DNA of 64,000 bases from Iphione sp. A-MEVVRFRX5 (GCA_976226885.1 OZ320320.1:52948001-53012000); one strand, 5' to 3'; positions 39,790 to 56,059 are shown, numbered from the stretch's first letter. The notes: generated from the sequence alone by a model not told the origin. Numbers and translations are program-made.

Positions 39790-40380
39790 AAGTACTTCCG
39801 GTTTATTGTGGGTCTCCTTCGAACGCCCGCTCGGTGCCATTTTTTCCCACTCCCAGCTTCTCTGGTTTCCCGTCACGCCCTGCGCGTCTAGAGTGAGTCG
39901 GATGGCGCGGTGAAGAGGATGGGTCTCTGCCCCGCGAGAGGAGGGAGGGCCACTCAAGTAACAAAACGATAAAGCTAGGGGAAGCCGAACGAGTTCAACT
40001 AGTCGTTCATCTTCTAAGTTGTAAGTGTCCTCCTCGTTACCAGCAATGCTCAGGGCATTGTTTCCATCATTTATATAGTAAGATTCCTGCCATTTCTTTA
40101 CCTCGCTAGATAAAGGGTTGTCTTCCATTCAGCCAGCAAGAGGCTTACTGCGTATTAGTGCTCACCAGGGGGCGCATTGGTTCCAGGCAGTCTTTCAGTT
40201 CCACCAATGAAAGAATGCTGTCGTTTCCCCTAGTCGACAGTCTCGTCGGGAGACGCGAAAAACGTAACCGTTCAAGGGGCGTTTTCTCGCGCATTCACTC
40301 GTAGCCAAATCTCGTCTTTCACGCATCGCATGATCCTAAACTAATCATGGCTGAATGTCATCTGCCGCTGGCTTCCGGTG
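39790..40380. promoter_or_regulatory. Promoter-like CpG patch with ETS, YY1 and CTCF-like motifs
   Basis: ACTTCCGG at 39794, GCCATTTT at 39836, TCACCAGGGGGCGC at 40162-40175, CTTCCGG at ~40372. Confidence 0.4.
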
Positions 40381-45591: not shown

Positions 45592-45767
45592 TATACCCGA
45601 TTTCTCGTTTATCCAGCAAACCTGACAATTTCCTCGCCAACTGTGATCACCAACCTATGGATTTTAGTACATATGATTCATAGTAGATATCTGACAGTTT
45701 GTCTGAAATTTCACATATTCTGCTTAGATCATGGTCAGTGACAAGCTTAAAACATAAGTTTAAGGAA

Positions 45768-46953
45768 AGCTGCAGAAAACAAATGTTTCCCATATCAAAT
45801 GTTGGTATGTTTGGTAATTTTTTTAGCATGGTTTTAAAAGGCTTCACCAACTGACTCTATCTGTATGACTGACAATATCATCTGCAAAGTTCTACTCATT
45901 GTTATATATGCACGCTCATAAAAGTTGTCTGTTTTCTTTACTATTGGTATGGTAATAAATTCCAAGACCAATATTTGTTTCAGAGAGCCCTGCAGAAGTC
46001 AATGTGGACAATCAAGGGTCTGCAGTGACCTCTGTAGTAGAAGAGAACCTAGATAGCAAGAAAGCTTCTGATGAGGGAAATCTACATAGCAAAACTCAAA
46101 CTAGTGGAGTCAACACAGCAGAACTTGAGAAGATACGTCAAAAGTTTGTCAAGTATGATGTTGACAACTCAGGTTATGTAGAATTGGCTGATGTAAAAGG
46201 GCTTCTCAAATTTTTGCCAGAAGATGGACAAGTAGCTGCTTGGAATGTGAGTTTTCTTGTTTTTTTTAAATAGATTTTTGGGAAAATTAGCCACTTATCT
46301 ATCAAATGCTAGGCAGTTATGTCCTTAGAATATTTTGTTCTGTACATTCATAATCCACACTATGCTGTATAAGCTGTAATACATTTCAAACTTGGTTTTA
46401 GTGAAAGAAATTTACAGGCATCAAAGAGACAACAACAAACCATGCATCATTATAACATGTTTCATAAAATTATCATTAATTGGTACATTCAGTACGCCAC
46501 AGTCTAAAGGAGGTTCCTTCAAAGACACTACATCTTTGCAGCTCTTATCAGCAGCAGATAAGTCCGGTGATGGAAAAATTACTTGGGATGAATTCAGACA
46601 ATATTTCTTGCCTTCAAAAGAACCAAAGAGCACAGGTAAGTTTATGTTTGGCTGATCACATAAGCCTTTAACAAGCAGAAAGGCTGAATGACTTACTACC
46701 TTACAGACTAAAACAGTATTTAGCGGCTTAATTGGCTTTGGGTGTGTGCACACGGGGACAAGGTTACAACGAAAGACTAATGAACAGACCATCAGTCAAC
46801 ATCTTATGGTGTGGATTAACTCTTTTATTCCATCATAATGATTTTCAGTCTAGGTAGTTAACAAAGGTTATCAGTCTAATTAGTCAACTAGACTTTTTTC
46901 TTAACAAGCCATTTCTGTGTTCAACTGATTCATTGTGATTGCTGTTGGCATTA
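45768..46953 (+). repeat. Left copy of ~1.19-kb direct duplication flanking the LINE
   Basis: Aligns colinearly with 54212-55889 (offset 8444 at the start) and ends exactly at the LINE 3' tail. Confidence 0.97.
45984..46635 (+). CDS. Two internal exons of a host EF-hand Ca-binding protein (45984-46246, 46542-46635), copy 1
   Basis: EF loops DVDNSGYVELAD and DKSGDGKITWDE lie 35 aa apart after splicing. Splice sites ttgtttcag|, |gtgagt, ctttgcag|, |gtaagt. Phase 1 in, phase 1 out, 357 nt total. Confidence 0.85.
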
Positions 46954-47537
46954 GATAGATAGATAACTTTATTGTCCTCTCTGTGAAGCTACAAAGTTTT
47001 CATTGGACAGTTATGTTGAACAACATGCGAGTCAACATTCACACAGTAATATCATGACTTGAAACAATTGAACATAATTACATACAGCGACATATGACGC
47101 CTTCTTACATACAGTTGGGTATTGTTGCAAGGAATCACCAATCATCAGCATACTGCATTCACAATTCATGCGACATATACAGGTGAGTTCTTTGATCCAA
47201 CATATGAAACAGCTCGCACACAGACAGCGGCAATAGTTGGGCTGGTTTACCTATATACTGGTGCCATGGTACATGTATTAGTTACCTTTCAAGTGTTATA
47301 ATAATTACAGGTCTTGAACCTGTCATAACGCCTTAGGCAAGAACTACCCGTCATGCAAAAAATAAACCATGATAACCCAAGAATGTTAATCTGCTTCCTT
47401 ACTCTCTCTGTTGTGATAATACGAGACTATCGGCCCATGTACCCCCCAGAAAGTTTTATTGCAGATTATTGCAGTCATGAACCATAGCCAGTAGTGTGAC
47501 TGTAGGGGAAAGCGCTGCCACTTCTGGCTCCTTCAAC

Positions 47538-50283
47538 CTAGTCGCATTCGCCCCGGCTCTGCAACCATACCCTGAAATTTGGTTTGGGATGCTGCCTGAG
47601 GTTCAACAGCAGATCATTCCAGTCTTGTACACCCTTGTGCCTAAGATGGCGAGCATTGAAACTTGAACGTGGCCAGTCACAACTGATCTTTACTGTTGTT
47701 CCCCTTCTAGTGCCAGTGTTTTTTGCCCTCGGGAGTGCCTCGAGAGCCACCAGTTTATGGATCACAGATAGAGAATGATGGGCAACTAGCGTATCCACCC
47801 TCTCAATGTTGTGTTTGGCGCAGATGGCTTTAGCCGTTTGGCGCGGGGTGTTTTGCAATGAAACCCTCACGCAGCGATTCAAATGAATCTGCATCTTCAT
47901 CACACATGACTTGGAGCAACCATAGAGGAGGATCACATTGTATTGCAGGTGTGTATACACCAGAGATTTGAACAAGATCAGTCTCGAGGCCAGCGGCAGG
48001 AAACGCTTTGTTCTCCTGATGCTTAGGGCCGCACTCCACATGCGATCCTTCCTCCCCTTTACAGCCTCAGTGAATCTTAGCTTGGAGTCAATAGTGTATC
48101 TGAGTATTCGCATACTCATTGCCATTTCCATCTTCTCCCCGTTGATGTTGATATCAAATTCAGCTCCACTAGCCTTTCCAAGTGGTAGATAACAGCACTT
48201 GCTGACACTTAACAATAGGCCAACACTAGCGCACCACTTTGAAACAGCATTGATGGTGGTTTGGCATGACCATCTTAACCACAATAGATCTCTTGCATCT
48301 ACCAAGATGGTCAGGTCATCCGCATACAAGATAGTGAAGCATTCCTTTGGAATGAACTTCAATATCTCATCTATCTCTGTCTATCTCAAGGATACAAAAA
48401 GCATTCGGACCGAAAATCGATCCCTGCGGAACACCATGATTGATACCTCTTCGATTGGAATCCTCACCCAGCACCTGCACAAATTGTGTACGGTCAGTGA
48501 AGTAGTCCCTAATAAGTCTGCAGACCTTAGTATTTGCACCTACAGATGTCAGTCTTCTGAGGACAACACTCGCAGGCACCAGATCAAAGGCCTTCTGCAT
48601 GTCGAAGGCCATGAGGCATACGTAGGCACCCTTGTTTAGCAGCTCGGTTGCCTTTGCCATGATTGCAGCGATCGCAGCCTCGGTGCTTCTGCCCTTGCAG
48701 AAGCCGTGTTGTTGTGTGCTCCGGAATGCCTTGCCCTCTAGTTTCTGCATCAAAGTGTTAAGAAACCACGCCTCAAATATTTTCCCCGGCAAGGGGAGAA
48801 TTGACACTGGTCTGTAGTTTCCTACAACATTCCTATCCCCCCTTTTGAAGAGCGGGGTGACACGGGCACATTTCCACTCATTCGGGTAGTTCCCCGTGTC
48901 AACTATCCGGGCAAAGATCCAGTGTACCAGATCTAATACCAAGAGAAGTAGTGGTTTCATCACCTTGGTGGGAATCCCTTGTACCCCCGAGGCTTTTTTG
49001 ACCTTCTGCTTCACCACATAAGGTCTCAGTTCAGCAGGCGGTGGCACTTCTATGTCAAAAGAAGGCGCAGTTGTAGCTGATGACCTGTTTGTTTGCGGTC
49101 CTAGCGGCGGTGCCAGTTCGGACACTTTGTCAATAAAGAAGTCATTGAACCTGACTGCGAGGCAACGCACCTCCTCCACATTTTGGGGATCAGCCTGTGG
49201 CAATGTAGTTCGGGTTACTCCCTTACCCATTGCTTCTTTCAGAGCTGCCCACAATTTGGCAGAGTCTCCTCCCGCCTCTCGTAGCCTGTCACTCCAATAC
49301 AATTTCCGGTCTATCCTAATCCCTTTTTTGACCTTTCTGTTATAGAACTGAAAGATCCTATGGGCATCCTCACAACGCTCCTTCTTCCACTTATTGAAGA
49401 AGTAGGCACGCTCTTTGATGAGCTCTAGCATCCCAACTGATGGGCAAAAGCCCTCTAAGTCGCATATTGTGGACACCCTCCTCGCAGGACACCATTCCTC
49501 AAGGATATTGCGGGTAGCCTCTTTGAAATTCGTCCAGCATACGGATGGATCCGGATCAAATCTGAGCCCATCGGCACGTAGGCGATCGTGAATTTGATCA
49601 ATGTCCGCCTTCTGCCATTTCCTGACCAACCTGGACTCCTTGTGCCTTCTCAGGGCACCTTTCTTTATCCACATTTTTACTGGAAGGTGGTCACTTAGGA
49701 ACCACTCTAATGTGGATACACTCAGAGCCCCGTTGTAATTGATCCAGATGTGGTCTAGACAACGATCTGACTCGATCATTCTGCAGTCAGTCACCTGTTG
49801 ACTGAAGCCCTTGGACGATAACAGGTCTGTGATGCTTGTTCCTGCTTTGGCCTTACCATAAAAGTCATAGTTCATGTCACCTGCAATAGTGACATCCCTG
49901 TTCCTAATGGCAAGGCAAGAGTCCACTACCCTGTCAAGCTCTCTTAGTGAGTCACTCATTTTGTTGTGAGGCGGTCTGTAAACAGCTACCATGGCATGAG
50001 GTCTTCTCTTACCAATTTTGACAACAACACTCAGGGCTTCACAGTCACTATCCGAGATTGTAAACTGCATTTCGTCCCCAAATCTCTTGCTCTTGCTGTA
50101 CCTGTCGGCGCGAACAAGGTTGTATCCGGAGATGGTTACCTCACCATTGGTGTGATTGGTATTTAACCAGGTCTCCGTTATGATGCATATATCAACGTCT
50201 ACTTCCAGGAGATGACGTCTCAGATCGTCCACCTTTTTGGCTAAACTGCGTACGTTGTACACAACCAGTGTGACTCCAGGCAT
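47538..50283 (-). pseudogene. LINE ORF2: apurinic endonuclease + reverse transcriptase, broken near 48400
   Basis: APE motifs YNVRSL, ITETWL, VYRPP, GDMN, LDHIW, SDHLPV. RT motifs NYRPVSILP, QHGF, AFDMQKAFD, GVPQGS, YADD. Frameshift plus stop between GVPQGSIFGP and ILYADD. Confidence 0.95.
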
Positions 50284-51500
50284 GGTTATCCCCTACAGTC
50301 ACACACTATGTATCCCCTATCAAATCTCCCTGATAATTGAAGGAATCTATCCAAAATTACCTTCAGTATACAAACAGTTTGGTTGGCGCTCGGTCAGTCA
50401 TTTTACTTGCCCCCCCATTATTCTGATATACACATGTTTACTCTAAGCACACTCTTTTCCATGCTATTGACGTTCATATAACAAAAAACGCCCACCGGTG
50501 GAACTCTACCTCTTTCAGGCCCTTTCAAATACGAGAGCTGCAGGTACATCATAACAACCATACACATAGGGACGTTGGACACAACCAAGGTATTGTGACT
50601 GACATGTATGGCAGACCATCATTGAAAAGATCGACACACCACCACACATATACACAACCATAGACATTGTTAGCAATAATAGCTTCCAGACTTTGCACAA
50701 CATGAAGACAGTACAGCACAGTGACAAGACATGCTACAACGTATATTCTTTCTGGCGAAACTGCATCTCAAGCATGACAATCCAGGCAAGTCTTATGTAG
50801 CCACTAACACCCTTTAAGAAAGCATCTCTTTGTGGTAATTGAATTAAAACTTTTATTTTCAAATACTGTAATTGTGATACTTAAAACAAATAGTGCTAGC
50901 AAACATCCAGGGACTTCCTAACCACCCCTAACTGAAGAGTTTACCTAGTAATCATTTTAGGCTGGCCAATAACTGCAGAGGAACTTGGCCTAGGAACAAT
51001 CCTGCACATTTGAGTACAAAAACAGAAAAAGGATTTGACAGCACTCACTGTATAAGAATTACCACCAACTGTAGATCAATGTCAGAAATAAATCTAACTA
51101 AGGGATTGTCGTCATCTCACATGTATCATGACAATAGTGATTGATTAAACAAGTTATAACATGCTATTGTAGAGCTAAAGCACCCCTATTATTAACTATT
51201 GACTCCACATAACTACTTTAAAGAAGCACAAAAACCCACAATAATTTGTTACAATTTGTATGCTGGTTTTGCTAGAGACAACAGAGACATGATACATGGT
51301 ACGTCAGATTATTATAGAAAATTAAATCTAAACAGAGAATCAAATACCGTACTCTTAATAGAGCAGTAGCAATGATTGTTAAACACTTGTCTTTTAACAG
51401 TTATGGATGGTTCCGCCCGTAGCACCGTAGTGCGACAAAAACAATCATTGAGCCGAAAGTGGTACAGGGTTTGACGACAGTTAACATCACGTTATTGCGC

Positions 51501-52244
51501 TTATGAAGGCCTTGGGTCAGGTACACCAGGGATAGACATTTTTTTGGCAAAAGCTTGCAAAAAGATAGCAATGGACCTTGTCCATACAGCACTCGTTTCA
51601 TTAGTCGGGCGCACCCCATCAACCCCTAAAAATTTCCCCCAGGTAGAGATATTAATATCATTACCCATACCAATACTGTTCACTGGCAGATCTAAACTTG
51701 GTGGCGGAATACCAAATTGCAGTGCTAACATTTTACAGAAGCTGTTGTGGGCGGCAATCATAGCGTTCACAATGACTTGTTCATCAGGATCAATAATGTC
51801 AGGTTCGAGTCTGCTCAGCAAAATGCCCGACATTGGACAGCATACAAGATGTGGACCCATGTTGAAAGGCTCCATGATCCAGTCCTTCAGTTTGCCAATG
51901 TAGGTAGATAAACATTCCAGGTAAAGCATTGGGCTCCTGAATCGTGGGGTCCATTGGCTGGCCTCTTTCCTCAGGATTTCTTGTAGACTAATGGCTATCA
52001 CTACTATGTCATAATTTGTAACATCAATGTACATGCGTTGACGCCACAGTTTCTTATAAGAAGCCTTGTTTATCTGCATGACGGGAATTGTTAAGGGCGG
52101 CAGTTCTGCATTTGCCAAGTCCTCCACCGTACTTGTCATTCTGCTGTCAATCACCAGTAAGACCCTCGGTCTGAAGCAGCTGCAAACATTGTGACCGCTG
52201 ATGATTGACCACTCTGCAAAAACATATGCAAGCACATGTAGCAT
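51501..52244 (-). CDS. LINE-borne SGNH/GDSL esterase-like ORF with degenerate catalytic blocks
   Basis: VLLVIDSR (block I GDS-like), YDIVVIAISLQE (block III strand), GVDGVRP (block V DGxHP-like) followed by a helix. Open 247 codons; a possible acceptor at 52171 means the true start is uncertain. Confidence 0.6.
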   Translation of the reverse strand: MLHVLAYVFAEWSIISGHNVCSCFRPRVLLVIDSRMTSTVEDLANAELPPLTIPVMQINKASYKKLWRQRMYIDVTNYDIVVIAISLQEILRKEASQWTPRFRSPMLYLECLSTYIGKLKDWIMEPFNMGPHLVCCPMSGILLSRLEPDIIDPDEQVIVNAMIAAHNSFCKMLALQFGIPPPSLDLPVNSIGMGNDINISTWGKFLGVDGVRPTNETSAVWTRSIAIFLQAFAKKMSIPGVPDPRPS

Positions 52245-52507
52245 AACAAAATATAGTCAGCCGTACCTATTAGCAAGCAATCAAAACTCCACATGATAAC
52301 AGTATTCTGATGGTAGTCTAATTTGTTGTTCAAAAGGCATTTACAAACTGTTGTACTGGCTATCCTTACATCAACTGATTGTATGCCCACAAGAGCTCCA
52401 AAAATTGCTCCACTATTACAGCAAAAAAGTTTATCCAGGATACCATGATAACAAACTGAGCAGTTTGAAACATAGAACCACACTGTGATTAATTCAGCAG
52501 AGTTCGT

Positions 52508-54130
52508 TTAAGCATTTTCATTTAGTAAAGCATCACAAAGTCGCATCGGCACAGTTCCTATCAGGTTACGACTGGTTAGAACAGCCAGCTCCGACCATTC
52601 ATCATCTAACCTGACACCAGCTCCCCACGATTGGTCGGCATTAGCGTAGAGTAGATGTAGATCACCAGATTTACTTAAAGCAGATGATAGAACCTCAGAA
52701 TATTGTAGTTTAGCACAATAGATATCCTCAAGAATTACCTCTGAATTCACTTCCCATTCTTGATTTGTTGGAATAGTATTTCCGATTCGTTTAGCCTCGA
52801 ACGCGCTCCTTGCTCTGCGAATGTCCTTCACCTTGCCACCACGCTCAGTGACGCGCGATTTGCAGATGTTGAATGCACTCACCACACTACAGAAACTTTC
52901 TCCCTTCCAAAGGAAAGGAGACTCCTCTAAGGGTGAGAGACCTGGTGAATCACAATTAAAAGCCAAAATGTTGCCCTCCGTCCTAGTGGCGGATGTCCCT
53001 GGCTTGATGGCATCAGGCAGAAATACCTCATCTGACGGAGAGAAGCACTCGCCATCAATATGTATGTTAACACCTTTGACAATCGCGCATTTGCCCATAC
53101 CCTTTGCAGCAGATGCTACCCGTTGTTGTCTCCTATGTTTTTCCATCGCACGCTGCGGGATATCTTCTCTGACATAAATAGCCTTCTATTTATGCATACC
53201 TGACATCCGCAATCTGTGACGGAGTAGTTGGTCCCTGACTTCCTTCGTAGTGAACACAATGCCGAGTTTGAGCTGGTTACCCAAATTACCCAGCCACAGA
53301 GTGTCGACTACGTTGTCACGTCTGATCCCAGCGACTTTCCAAGCCATCTTCAAGAGAAAAACGTGACAATCCCTTACTTCACTCTTCTTGACACCCTCAA
53401 CGACCACCTTTCTTGAACGCTCTTCAATTTCCACACGACATAGATCATCATCGAGTCTTGACGCCTTATCTTCAAGATATTTAACTTTGGCATCCAACCT
53501 ACCCACAGTGATGCTAGTTGTGTTGACGATGCGCAATGCGCTTTGCAGATTTTGGCGCAGCACAGCATTCTCACCTCTTAGATCCTTGATCTCTTCTCTC
53601 AGACCTCCAATCTCAGAGTTGTAGTGGTTCCTGAGTGCCACTAACCCCTCACATAGCGTTTCGAGTCCACCGATGTCCATCTGCCCTCCTCTGCTGTCAG
53701 TGCCACTCTGATGACAGCTGTCACTGCCATGTCTGCCTTGGCCTGCGTTGTTTCCTGGTAATGAGTCACCTCCAGGGACTGGGCCAGCTCCAGCACCACT
53801 GGCAAGCCAATCATCGCCCGAAGCATTCTGCTCCTCATCTCCCTTAGCGAGACTGTCATGGTCCCGTCTGCTGTTAGCTGCTCCCACCTCTAGGCCTGAG
53901 CTGTCAACAGTGTCAACGATGTCACTAGTTGCAGGTTAGTCTTTGTTTACGTTCTGCCCTACCGGTGCATTTTCAATGGCAACTTCATCGGTTCCCCTAT
54001 TATCACTCGGCTTTCTTGGGCCTCGGCTGGTTGATCTTCCTGAGCCCCTTGGACGACCTCTAGGACGCAGAGTTGGTGTCTCTACTCCCTCCGAGGCTTG
54101 ATTCTGTGGTTTAATCGAGTTTTTGCCCAT
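52508..54130 (-). pseudogene. LINE ORF1 (~540 codons): AT-hook, coiled coil, RRM-like domain, C-terminal NADAR domain; two in-frame stops
   Basis: The track ORFs 53936-54130, 53186-53887 and 52508-53146 are all in one frame, separated by single TAA (53936-8) and TAG (53186-8) codons. Motifs: RPRGRPR AT-hook, heptads, EERSRKVVVEGV...IYVREDIP RRM-like signature, NADAR motifs at ~52520-52970. Confidence 0.85.
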
Positions 54131-54427
54131 TGTTGCGGCTGTGCGAGCAATCGTCCTGACCGAGCACCGTTACCGTGCAACCTCACGCTACCGCCATTAT
54201 AGTAACATTCCAGCTGCAGATTACAAATGTTTCCCATATCAAATGTTGGTATGTTTGGTAATTTTTTTAGCATGGTTTTAAAAGGCTTCACCAACTGACT
54301 CTATCTGTATGACTGACAATATTATCTGCAAAGTTCTACTCATTGTTATATATGTACGCTCATAAAAGTTGTTTGTTTTCTTTACTATTGGTATGGTAAT
54401 AAATTCCAAGACCAACATTTGTTTCAG

Positions 54428-55078
54428 AGAGCCCTGCAGAAGTCAATGTGGACAATCAAGGGTCTGCAGTGACCTCTGTAGTAGAAGAGAACCTAGATAG
54501 CAAGAAAGCTTCTGATGAGGGAAATCTACAAAGCAAAACTCAAACTAGTGGAGTCAATACAGCAGAACTTGAGAAGATACGTCAAAAGTTTGTCAAGTAT
54601 GATGTTGACAACTCAGGTTATGTAGAATTGGCTGATGTAAAAGGGCTTCTCAAATTTTTGCCAGAAGATGGACAAGTAGCTGCTTGGAATGTGAGTTTTC
54701 TTATTTTTCTAAATAGATTTTTGGGAAAATTAGCTTTTTATCTATCAAATGCTAGGCAGTTATGTCCTTAGAATATTTTGTTCTGTACATTCATAATCCA
54801 CACTATGCTGAATAAGCTCTAATACATTTCAAACTTGGTTTTAGTGAAAGAAATTTACGGGCATCAAAGAGACAACAACAAACCATGTATCATTATAATA
54901 TGTTTCATAAAATTATCATTAATTGGTATGTTCAGTATGCCACGGTCTGAAGGAGGTTCCATCAAAGACACTACATCTTTGCAGCTCTTATCAGCAGCAG
55001 ATAAGTCCGGTGATGGAAAAATTACTTGGGATGAATTCAGGCAATATTTCTTGCCTTCAAAAGAACCAAAGAGCACAG
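54428..55078 (+). CDS. Duplicated EF-hand exon pair (54428-54690, 54985-55078), copy 2
   Basis: Same four splice sites intact, frame open, 3 substitutions versus copy 1 in 357 nt (H>Q plus two synonymous). Confidence 0.75.
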
Positions 55079-55326
55079 GTAAGTTTATGTTTGGCTAATC
55101 ACATTAGCCTTTAACAAGCAGAAAGGCTGAATGACTTACTACCTTACAGACTAAAACAGTTTTTAGCGGCTTAATTGGCTTTGAGTGTGTGCACACAGGG
55201 ACAAGGTTACAACGAAAGACTAACGAACAGACCATCAGTCAACATCTTATGGTGTGGATTAACTCTTTTATTCCATCATAATGATTTTCAGTCTAGGTAG
55301 TTAACATAGGTTATCAGTCTAATTAG

Positions 55327-55791
55327 CTCTGATTTGTGGGAGAGGTGGGTTTATACTGCAAATTGGTGGGTTTATACCACAAATCAGGGGGTTTATACTT
55401 CAAAAGGGTGTCACAAAGTACTTGGAGGGGTGGAACACTTCCAAAGGGACAGTTTAGAGGTGTGGGAGAGGAGCATTACCACTTCTATCAAGCACTATAG
55501 GGACAGGCTGGAGGGGACAGTGCCTTCAAAGGGACAGCTCAGAGTTGTGGGAGAGAAGTGCTACCACATCTATCACATTTCCATACCTACTTGTTCAGTC
55601 TTAGCTACTTGTAAAATATGTCTTTAGGCCACATCTTACTGTATGACTTGTAAAACATGGCCCTAGGAATCATTCTACATGATAACCTGTATAGAGTGGC
55701 CTCAGGCCACAAAGTCTCTAATAGGGACAAGCCTCCATTAGGGACATTTTGGCTAAGAACAGAGGGTGTCCCTAATAGAGGCGTTCCACTG
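55327..55791 (-). mobile_element. One-ended DNA-element fragment flanked by a 20-bp direct repeat
   Basis: TAGGTTATCAGTCTAATTAG at 55307-55326 and 55792-55811. The right end reads as a Tc1/mariner-type MITE terminus (CAGTGGAACGCCTCTATTAGGGACA on the minus strand) abutting TA; no matching left terminus. Confidence 0.7.
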
Positions 55792-56059
55792 TAGGTTATC
55801 AGTCTAATTAGTCAACTAGACTTTTTTCTTAACAAGCCATTTCTGTGTTCGACTGATTCGTAGGTGGTTTGCGATTGCTGTTGGCGTTAATACTGTTAAT
55901 GGTCATGTGGGTACCACTGTGAACAGACAGACTGTTCCTCATATAAATGTGTGCACGACTGATTACAGTCAGTGGTAATAATTGTCTGTGGCGCCATCTT
56001 CAGAGAAAAGCCCAACTAAAAGAATACCTTGTGAAACTGCCGACGGCATGAGCGGCAGA

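What the first reader, a model, noticed from the sequence alone, without database searches (positions are those of the whole stretch)
45768..55889. Full-length LINE flanked by a ~1.19-kb direct repeat with exact target-site-duplication geometry
Seen: unique - T(45768-46953) - LINE(46954-54211) - T'(54212-55889) - unique. The left copy stops at the (TATC)n tail and the right copy starts at the LINE 5' end, with no N gap nearby. Established: TPRT normally yields TSDs of a few to tens of bp, and kilobase-scale TSDs are known mainly from engineered human L1 insertions in cultured cells. Inference: a natural mega-TSD from a distant second-strand nick, or LINE capture at a break during tandem duplication. 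The copies have diverged (~6% by eye in the internal intron), consistent with the few lesions in the LINE.
Basis: partly seen in the sequence, partly recalled or inferred. Interest (0 to 1): 0.85.

Follow-up and report, generated by a model that had tools for sequence, protein, structure and literature searches.

The report
LINE insertion that duplicated two exons
A full-length jumping gene (a LINE) sits exactly between two 97%-identical copies of a 1.19-kb gene piece, so its insertion most likely copied two calcium-binding exons in frame; this outcome is known from cell-culture assays but is rarely seen fixed in a wild animal genome.

Summary
T (45768-46953) and T' (54212-55889) are direct repeats. 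Excluding a later 466-bp repeat insertion in T', they differ at 0.84% of exon sites and 4.0% of intron sites. They abut a 7.26-kb minus-strand LINE (APE + RT + NADAR).

- T ends at the LINE's (TATC)3 tail.
- T' starts 14 nt beyond the family's shared 5' start (ATGGCGG). Those 14 nt are junction filler.
- T occurs nowhere else in the genome, so this is not transduction.
- The LINE subfamily has only one other copy at 90% identity or more, so recombination between two nearby insertions is very unlikely.
- Three full-length relatives show no long flanking repeat.

Dating fits one event. The LINE's private changes are spread evenly over codon positions and amount to 2.4% (1.9% non-CpG). T/T' intron divergence is 2.05% per copy (1.45% non-CpG).

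Best reading (about 0.72): target-primed reverse transcription completed at a top-strand break 1,186 nt away, or an equivalent replicative repair. This gave a kilobase target-site duplication that copied a two-exon EF-hand module in frame.

The mechanism is known from ZfL2-2 (1,228 bp in DT40 cells), L1 in NER-deficient cells and tumours, and Dualen in Chlamydomonas. This is therefore a new natural member of a known kind.

No sequencing runs or related genomes were available, so misassembly is not formally excluded. Other notes in this scan report 46-, 95- and 254-bp LINE duplications elsewhere in this genome; I did not test them.

The parts
45768..46953 (+). T, the left copy of the 1,186-bp duplicated target. 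It is intron, exon A, intron, exon B, intron of an EF-hand gene on the + strand.
   Evidence: 97% identical to 54212-55889; no other copy in the 1.18-Gb genome apart from 71-79% paralogous exons on C15.
45984..46246 (+). Exon A in T (263 nt), with cag|AG acceptor and G|gtgagt donor. It encodes the first EF-hand of the module.
   Evidence: open frame; with exon B it makes 357 nt, which is 119 codons.
46542..46635 (+). Exon B in T (94 nt), the second EF-hand (DKSGDGKITWDEF).
46954..46965 (-). LINE 3' microsatellite tail, (TATC)3 in LINE sense. This is the first-strand (TPRT) junction with T.
   Evidence: the same end, GAGGACAATAAAGTTATC(TATC)n, is seen in the related copies.
46954..54197 (-). 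Full-length LINE, antisense to the host gene and lying in the intron between the two modules. Its reading frames are broken.
   Evidence: collinear with the sister copy C15:67263508-67272699 at 90-94% identity; this copy is the more complete of the two.
47538..50283 (-). ORF2, with apurinic-type endonuclease and reverse transcriptase. It is split into two ORFs (48367-50283 and 47538-48362) by a frame break.
   Evidence: Exo_endo_phos 6e-06, Exo_endo_phos_2 1.6e-06, RVT_1 2e-15 and 1e-05.
52508..53146 (-). NADAR-domain ORF in the ORF1 region of the LINE.
   Evidence: PF08719, E 2.2e-11, 44.7 bits (cut-off 35.1).
54198..54211 (-). 14 extra nucleotides (GGAATGTTACTATA in LINE sense) between the LINE 5' start and T'.
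   Evidence: absent from the C15, C4 and C19 copies; the 21-mer that includes them is unique in the genome; no template within 300 bp.
54212..55889 (+). T', the right copy of the duplicated target. It continues without a break into unique sequence.
54428..54690 (+). Exon A' in T'. Splice sites and frame are intact. It has one replacement (H to Q) and one silent difference from exon A.
54985..55078 (+). Exon B' in T', with one silent difference from exon B.
55327..55792 (+). Later insertion in T' of a 5'-truncated copy of a high-copy repeat. It is flanked by an ordinary 19-bp TSD (55308-55326 and 55793-55811). T keeps the empty site.
   Evidence: more than 1,000 candidates genome-wide, 90-96% identical.

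Best explanation
One retrotransposition event made both the LINE insertion and the duplication.

The element's endonuclease nicked the + strand between ...GGCRTTA and ATACTG, at the T|U2 boundary (U1 and U2 are the unique sequence left and right of the structure). The freed 3' end, with 2 nt (TA) of overlap with the tail repeat, primed reverse transcription of a full-length LINE RNA from its (TATC)n tail. The opposite strand was not broken a few bases away as usual. It was broken, or the new DNA end re-engaged the duplex, 1,186 nt away at the U1|T boundary. The LINE 5' end was joined there through 14 filler nucleotides, and fill-in or displacement synthesis copied the 1,186 nt a second time. 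The product is U1-T-LINE(antisense)-T'-U2, a kilobase-scale target-site duplication.

T holds a complete two-exon EF-hand-pair module of 357 nt, so the event created an in-frame second module separated from the first by an intron of about 8 kb that carries the LINE.

Shown: the geometry, the element ends, the uniqueness of T, the copy number of the subfamily and the matching ages.

Inferred: the order of molecular steps; whether the distal break was an endonuclease nick, a chance lesion or a replicative template switch; and that both modules are spliced into the mRNA.
For: (1) Geometry is exact at all four boundaries. T's last base abuts the tail. T' starts after the LINE 5' end plus 14 nt. 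T's first base follows U1 and T's last homologous base in T' precedes U2. Nothing from the target is missing or overlapping.

(2) The ends are true element ends. The 3' end is shared by 28 related loci. The 5' start ATGGCGG is shared by the C15, C4 and C19 copies.

(3) The polarity is that of a normal TSD, with the top-strand break 3' of the bottom-strand nick.

(4) T is single-locus and absent from the sister copy's flanks, so this is not transduction.

(5) Only two copies at 90% identity or more exist in 1.18 Gb; the next is 77-78% identical.

(6) Ages match. Over 2,071 aligned RT-region sites polarised with a 78% outgroup, this copy has 49 private changes (2.4%). They are spread 14/21/14 over codon positions, which is neutral decay. 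Outgroup differences are 97/69/223 (p = 3e-23), showing that the frame is right and that family-level divergence was under selection. T/T' introns differ by K2P 0.041, which is 2.05% per copy. The non-CpG figures are 1.88% and 1.45%.

(7) Filler nucleotides at the 5' junction are typical of L2-clade LINE insertions (PMC4245944).

(8) There is precedent at the same size: a 1,228-bp TSD in 1 of 25 ZfL2-2 insertions in wild-type DT40 cells (PMC2666801); TSDs over 1 kb for L1 in NER-deficient cells (PMC5223499); 1-10 kb tandem duplications at L1 junctions (10.1101/2024.12.14.628481); and Dualen TSDs with a median of 900 bp (PMC9977147).
Against: - There is no read-level or population check of the assembly: no runs were listed and no related genome is held.
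- The paralogous gene on C15 carries at least 6 tandem copies of the same two-exon module at a period of 1.1-1.7 kb with no LINE between them. This module therefore duplicates by other routes, and T's length falls within that range.
- No long TSD was seen at three full-length relatives or within reach at 28 other 3' ends, so this is a one-off for the group.
- Dating is one-sided. It shows the LINE is not clearly younger than the duplication, within about 0.7% divergence. It does not prove the two events were simultaneous.
- Gene conversion between T and T' could have lowered their divergence.
Confidence: 0.72

Rival explanations
1. Two independent events. An ordinary tandem duplication of the two-exon module came first, as seen repeatedly in the C15 paralog. 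A later, unrelated LINE insertion happened to land exactly on the T|T' junction with no TSD and no deletion of its own.
For: The paralog has at least 6 tandem modules with a period of 1.1-1.7 kb and no LINE. T is 1,186 bp, within that range. LINEs of this group show no clear short TSDs at three full-length copies, so an insertion without a TSD is not odd in itself.
Against: The insertion would have to hit one specific phosphodiester bond (within 1-2 nt) out of about 2,370 in the array. It would also have to come from a subfamily that left only two copies in 1.18 Gb. And it would have to fall within the same narrow time window as the duplication (2.4% against 2.05% per-copy divergence). No part of T or T' is displaced across the LINE.
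Confidence: 0.07
2. Assembly artefact. T and T' are the two haplotypes of one segment that were wrongly placed on either side of a heterozygous LINE, or a chimeric join was made through the repeat.
For: Intron divergence of 4% plus an insertion polymorphism could be allelic in a highly heterozygous invertebrate. No reads could be laid. The look-up of encoding contigs and two metagenome scans found nothing independent.
Against: - There is no N gap within 10 kb.
- Both inner junctions coincide with true element ends. A chimeric join would not respect those ends.
- For both junctions to exist in reads without the duplication, two separate insertions of a two-copy subfamily would be needed.
- The LINE is nearly single-copy, so there is no repeat-graph tangle to traverse.
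- T/T' divergence equals twice the LINE's neutral decay. That is expected for a real duplication and would be a coincidence for alleles.
- No alternative haplotig of T exists in the assembly.
Confidence: 0.1
3. Unequal homologous recombination between two same-orientation LINE insertions on homologues or sister chromatids. One lay at the left edge of T and the other at the right edge, giving U1-T-LINE-T-U2.
For: The product would be structurally indistinguishable from a mega-TSD.
Against: It needs two independent full-length insertions 1.2 kb apart from a subfamily with two surviving copies genome-wide. No mosaic structure is evident: the LINE is collinear with its sister copy, although a mosaic was not specifically tested for.
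Confidence: 0.03

Closest known systems
Long target-site duplication (L-TSD) of the L2-clade LINE ZfL2-2 in chicken DT40 cells (Suzuki et al. 2009, PMC2666801)
   Same: An APE-type LINE with a microsatellite tail. One of 25 wild-type insertions had a 1,228-bp TSD, almost the same size as the 1,186 bp here. The same laboratory reports 5' extra nucleotides as common for these elements (PMC4245944).
   Different: That was an engineered element in cultured somatic cells. This one is a natural, old (about 2% decay) germline insertion in an invertebrate genome. It is full-length and duplicates coding exons in frame.
Kilobase TSDs of engineered human L1 in NER-deficient cells (Servant et al. 2017, PMC5223499), and small (1-10 kb) tandem duplications at L1 junctions in tumours and L1-expressing clones (10.1101/2024.12.14.628481; PMC7058536)
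   Same: The LINE lies exactly between two direct copies of the target, with a TPRT signature at the 3' junction. Proposed causes are a distant second nick, a DNA end arising during replication or repair, or break-induced replication. Servant et al. explicitly predicted that exons could be duplicated.
   Different: Those cases are L1 clade with a poly(A) tail, in repair-defective or cancer cells and not transmitted. Here there is no sign of a repair defect, the event is in the assembly as germline sequence, and both exon copies are conserved.
Dualen-4b_cRei duplications in Chlamydomonas mutation-accumulation lines (Lopez-Cortegano et al. 2023, PMC9977147)
   Same: Spontaneous, not engineered, LINE insertions flanked by duplications with a median of 900 bp, read as very long TSDs.
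   Different: Dualen has both RLE and APE endonucleases, and long TSDs are its habit, seen in more than half of insertions. Here the element has APE only and its relatives show no long TSD. The host is a green alga, not an animal.
R9 LINEs of bdelloid rotifers, with a 126-bp TSD (cited in PMC9977147 as the largest natural TSD reported up to then)
   Same: A long natural TSD of a LINE in an invertebrate genome.
   Different: R9's TSD is a fixed, site-specific 126 bp. The case here is ten times longer and is a one-off.

Membership tests
Non-LTR retrotransposon (LINE), APE type | ORF2 with an apurinic-type endonuclease followed by a reverse transcriptase | tested here: met
   Exo_endo_phos, Exo_endo_phos_2 and RVT_1 on 48367-50283 and 47538-48362 (minus strand); the nearest Atlas clusters are EN+RT proteins of invertebrates.
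Non-LTR retrotransposon (LINE), APE type | No LTRs or TIRs, and a defined 3' end with a simple-repeat tail shared by family members | tested here: met
   no inverted repeats; the 3' end GAGGACAATAAAGTTATC followed by (TATC)n, (AATC)n or (ATTC)n is present at 28 loci.
Non-LTR retrotransposon (LINE), APE type | Full-length copy, with its 5' end at the family's common start | tested here: met
   the C15, C4 and C19 copies all start at (AC)ATGGCGG; this copy lacks the deletion and the nested insert of its sister.
CR1/L2-group clade assignment | Placement in an RT phylogeny with named clade references | not tested
   The microsatellite tail and the multi-ORF layout only suggest this group. No phylogeny was built.
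Target-site duplication made by TPRT | Direct repeats immediately abut both element ends, and the pre-insertion site is reconstructed without loss or overlap | tested here: met
   the boundaries are 45767|45768, 46953|46954, 54211|54212 and 55889|55890. The 14-nt filler is the only extra sequence.
Target-site duplication made by TPRT | The repeat is target DNA, not part of the element and not transduced flank | tested here: met
   T occurs only at this locus; the sister copy has unrelated flanks.
Target-site duplication made by TPRT | The duplication and the insertion have the same age | tested here: met
   LINE private neutral changes are 2.4% (non-CpG 1.88%) against T/T' per-copy divergence of 2.05% (non-CpG 1.45%). 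The test is one-sided and its confidence intervals are wide.
Target-site duplication made by TPRT | An empty site (one T, no LINE) exists in an allele or orthologue | not testable with these tools
   no runs listed. G000 has no relatives in the genome collection. Searches were blank.
Target-site duplication made by TPRT | Junctions supported by single molecules, to exclude an assembly artefact | not testable with these tools
   no runs, so read laying was never used.
Functional tandem exon duplication | The duplicated unit is a multiple of 3, with compatible phases and intact splice sites in both copies | tested here: met
   263 + 94 = 357 nt, and the exon phases match (2 nt at the start of exon A, 1 nt at the end of exon B). 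AG acceptors and GT donors are identical in T and T'; both copies are open.
Functional tandem exon duplication | Both copies are under purifying selection | tested here: inconclusive
   exon 0.84% against intron 4.0%, Fisher p = 0.0027, with 1 replacement and 2 silent changes. This fits constraint on both copies, but the counts are small.
Functional tandem exon duplication | A transcript contains both modules | not testable with these tools
   No RNA runs were listed.

The most novel reading that the evidence does not exclude
A single germline LINE insertion with a 1.19-kb target-site duplication created a functional, selectively retained extra EF-hand-pair module in a host protein. On this reading, TPRT with a distant second-strand break is a natural route to in-frame exon or domain duplication in animals. 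It may recur in this genome and could seed the tandem module arrays seen in the paralog.
Probability: 0.4. Interest if true: 0.65.

Novelty: new member of a known kind. Interest (0 to 1): 0.5.

Why it matters
Kilobase target-site duplications have been documented in engineered or somatic settings and in algal mutation-accumulation lines. In the papers I could search, the largest natural LINE TSD cited was 126 bp (PMC9977147).

This locus would be a natural, inherited animal example. Its age can be read twice, from LINE decay and from repeat divergence, and its outcome has biological meaning: an in-frame copy of a two-exon calcium-binding module with both copies conserved. [quoted passage not shown]

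It offers a concrete case for asking how often retrotransposition, rather than unequal crossing-over, starts exon-repeat arrays. It also gives a fixed record of where the second-strand break fell.

Tried and rejected
- **Sequencing runs.** Two searches (10 kb and 2.2 kb) listed none, so read laying was never used. None was listed, which is not the same as none existing.
- **Independent contigs.** The look-up of encoding contigs with the 638-aa ORF2 piece found nothing on record.
- **Metagenome scans.** Two exact-pattern scans, one with a T-start 26-mer and one with an exon-B 26-mer, gave 0 hits.
- **Homologues of exon A.** The search of protein representatives found no close relative. The best hit was 32% identical, a 5,817-aa protein with 13 matched stretches. 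No orthologue was available to count modules.
- **Phage collection.** A search with the 466-bp insert was pointless and blank.
- **Transduction.** Rejected.
- **Long TSD as a family habit.** Rejected for three full-length relatives with 2.4-3 kb flanks. Not seen at 28 other 3' ends, but there only 1.5 kb upstream was in hand.
- **Template for the 14-nt filler.** None within 300 bp of any junction.
- **Further exons of the host gene.** Comparison with the paralog by tblastx found none outside T and T', so the full gene model remains unknown.
- **LINE clade.** Not determined.


Full report
**Observation.** The window holds a single long direct repeat. T is 45768-46953 and T' is 54212-55889. A gapped alignment shows them collinear from first to last base, apart from small gaps (a 1-nt and an 8-nt indel) and a 466-bp block in T' (55327-55792). 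That block is flanked by its own 19-bp duplication, AGGTTATCAGTCTAATTAG, of which T keeps one copy. Between T and T' lies a 7.26-kb element on the minus strand. No N run lies within 10 kb.

**The element.** Minus-strand ORFs carry an apurinic-type endonuclease and reverse transcriptase (48367-50283 and 47538-48362) and a NADAR domain (52508-53146). The frames are broken in several places.

- Its 3' end...GAGGACAATAAAGTTATC(TATC)3, is the same as in related copies on C15, C4 and C19 and at 25 further loci. Those carry (TATC)n, (AATC)n or (ATTC)n tails. The tail starts at 46954, directly after T.
- At the other end, the closest copy (C15:67263508-67272699, 90-94% identical) starts to align at 54197 with ATGGCGG. 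Two copies at 72-76% identity start at (AC)ATGGCGG too.
- The 14 nt between that start and T' (54198-54211, GGAATGTTACTATA in LINE sense) are therefore junction filler. The 21-mer that includes them is unique in the genome, and no template lies within 300 bp.
- Filler nucleotides at the 5' junction are reported as common for L2-clade LINEs (PMC4245944).
- The copy here is full-length. Its sister has a 244-bp deletion and a 2.18-kb foreign insert.

**What T is.** T contains two exons on the + strand, 45984-46246 and 46542-46635, with canonical splice sites. Together they are 357 nt, or 119 codons, and encode an EF-hand pair. The phases allow exon B to splice to exon A' in frame. Both copies are open and keep all four splice sites.

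Exons differ at 3 of 357 sites (one replacement, two silent). Introns differ at 33 of 828 sites (K2P 0.041), Fisher p = 0.0027. The LINE is antisense to the gene and sits in what is now an intron of about 8 kb.

**Tests that could have refuted a single event.**

1. *Transduction.* T occurs only here. The only other matches are 71-79% paralogous exons on C15, and the sister LINE has unrelated flanks.
2. *Family habit or repeat artefact.* Three full-length relatives have no direct repeat longer than 15 nt between 2.4-3 kb of flank on each side. At 28 other 3' ends, none had a repeat of 40 nt or more between 600 nt downstream and 1.5 kb upstream.
3. *Two insertions plus recombination.* The subfamily has only two copies at 90% identity or more in 1.18 Gb; the next is 77-78% identical.
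4. *Age.* I aligned 2,071 RT-region sites of this copy, its sister and a 78% outgroup (C15:96.9 Mb), and counted differences only.
   - This copy has 49 private changes (2.4%) and the sister has 64 (3.1%).
   - The private changes are even over codon positions (14/21/14 and 22/17/25).
   - Changes separating the outgroup from the shared state are 97/69/223 (p = 3e-23).
   - So the frame is right, the family evolved under selection while active, and the private changes are neutral decay after insertion.
   - T/T' introns give 2.05% per copy. Without CpG transitions the figures are 1.88% and 1.45%.
   - The LINE is thus as old as the duplication within sampling error. A clearly younger LINE would have pointed to a later, unrelated insertion.

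**Mechanism.** In LINE orientation the structure is flankA-TSD-filler-LINE-tail-TSD-flankB, with normal TSD polarity. The + strand was nicked between GGCRTTA and ATACTG, and its 3' end primed cDNA synthesis; TA can pair with the tail repeat. The opposite strand was opened 1,186 nt away at 45767|45768, or the nascent end switched back onto the duplex there. The 5' end was joined through 14 filler nucleotides.

Differences between T and T' cluster at the ends of the repeat: two adjacent mismatches 10-11 nt from its start, and an 8-nt indel plus three mismatches in its last 22 nt. This would fit error-prone synthesis or end processing, but it cannot be polarised without an outgroup.

**Rivals.**

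- *Pre-existing tandem duplication hit later by the LINE.* This deserves attention because the paralog at C15:81.507-81.527 Mb has at least six tandem copies of the same two-exon module at a period of 1.1-1.7 kb without any LINE. But it requires one of two surviving insertions to land on one bond, without a footprint, at the same time as the duplication. I give it about 0.07.
- *Misassembly.* This cannot be excluded without reads. However, both inner junctions coincide with true element ends, the element is nearly single-copy, there is no gap, and the T/T' divergence equals twice the LINE's decay. I give it about 0.1.
- *Recombination between two allelic insertions.* About 0.03.

**Comparison with what is known.** The closest precedent is a 1,228-bp TSD in 1 of 25 insertions of the L2-clade ZfL2-2 in wild-type DT40 cells (PMC2666801).

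Other precedents:

- TSDs over 1 kb for engineered L1 in NER-deficient cells, with fewer than 10% of insertions over 100 bp in HeLa (PMC5223499).
- Tandem duplications of 1-10 kb at L1 junctions in clones and tumours (10.1101/2024.12.14.628481).
- A 22.6-Mb L1-bridged tandem duplication (PMC7058536).
- Dualen-4b TSDs with a median of 900 bp in Chlamydomonas lines. That paper cites 126 bp (R9, rotifers) as the largest natural TSD known up to then (PMC9977147).

The kind is therefore known. What is new is a natural, inherited, dated animal case that copies exons in frame with both copies conserved.

**Earlier notes of this scan.** One note (s1-317877) makes the same in-frame and exon-conservation point, which I re-derived. 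Others report the NADAR/SGNH three-ORF LINE lineage. I reproduced the NADAR hit, but found no Pfam hit at E of 0.01 or better for the proposed SGNH ORF. Three untested notes describe 46-, 95- and 254-bp LINE duplications elsewhere in this genome, which would suggest a long tail of TSD lengths.

**Verdict.** This is a new member of a known kind, with interest 0.5. The main open items are read support, the empty site and expression of both modules.

Noticed in passing
G000:C15:81507398-81527078 (loci L059-L061): A paralogous gene carries at least six tandem copies of the same two-exon EF-hand-pair module (47-66% amino-acid identity to T's exons) at a period of 1.1-1.7 kb, with no LINE between modules. 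The family evidently grows by module duplication.
   Followed up: partly
window 55327-55792 (TSD at 55308-55326 and 55793-55811): A 466-bp insert in T' is a 5'-truncated copy of a repeat with more than 1,000 candidate copies (90-96% identical). It has an ordinary 19-bp TSD. Longer copies begin with a sequence that looks like the inverse of the 3' end, so the element's class is unclear.
   Followed up: partly
window 40074-40087 (minus strand) versus 54198-54211: The 14-nt 5' junction filler matches 13 of 14 nt (15 of 17 with the adjacent bases) at a site 14 kb away on the same strand. The chance expectation is about 0.01-0.02 per window. This is either a templated filler or a coincidence.
   Followed up: partly
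window 52508-53146 (minus strand): There is a NADAR domain (PF08719, E 2e-11) in the ORF1 region of the LINE.
   Followed up: partly
G000:C15:67263508-67272699 (loci L043, L046): This is the only close sister copy of the LINE (90-94% identical). It has a 2.18-kb unrelated nested insert and a 244-bp deletion, and 3.1% private neutral changes. The subfamily apparently made a brief burst that left two copies.
   Followed up: yes
window 45777-45778 and 46932-46953: Differences between T and T' are concentrated at the two ends of the repeat. Two adjacent mismatches lie 10-11 nt from its start, and an 8-nt indel plus 3 mismatches lie in its last 22 nt, against about 4% elsewhere. This may be a footprint of junction processing.
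   Followed up: partly
loci L016-L042: A conserved 3' module of about 60-70 nt (GAGGACAATAAAGTTATC plus tail) is shared at about 90% identity by many loci whose bodies are only 65-77% alike, and the tails vary between (TATC)n, (AATC)n and (ATTC)n. The 3' end seems to be conserved across LINE subfamilies, possibly as the RT recognition site.
   Followed up: no
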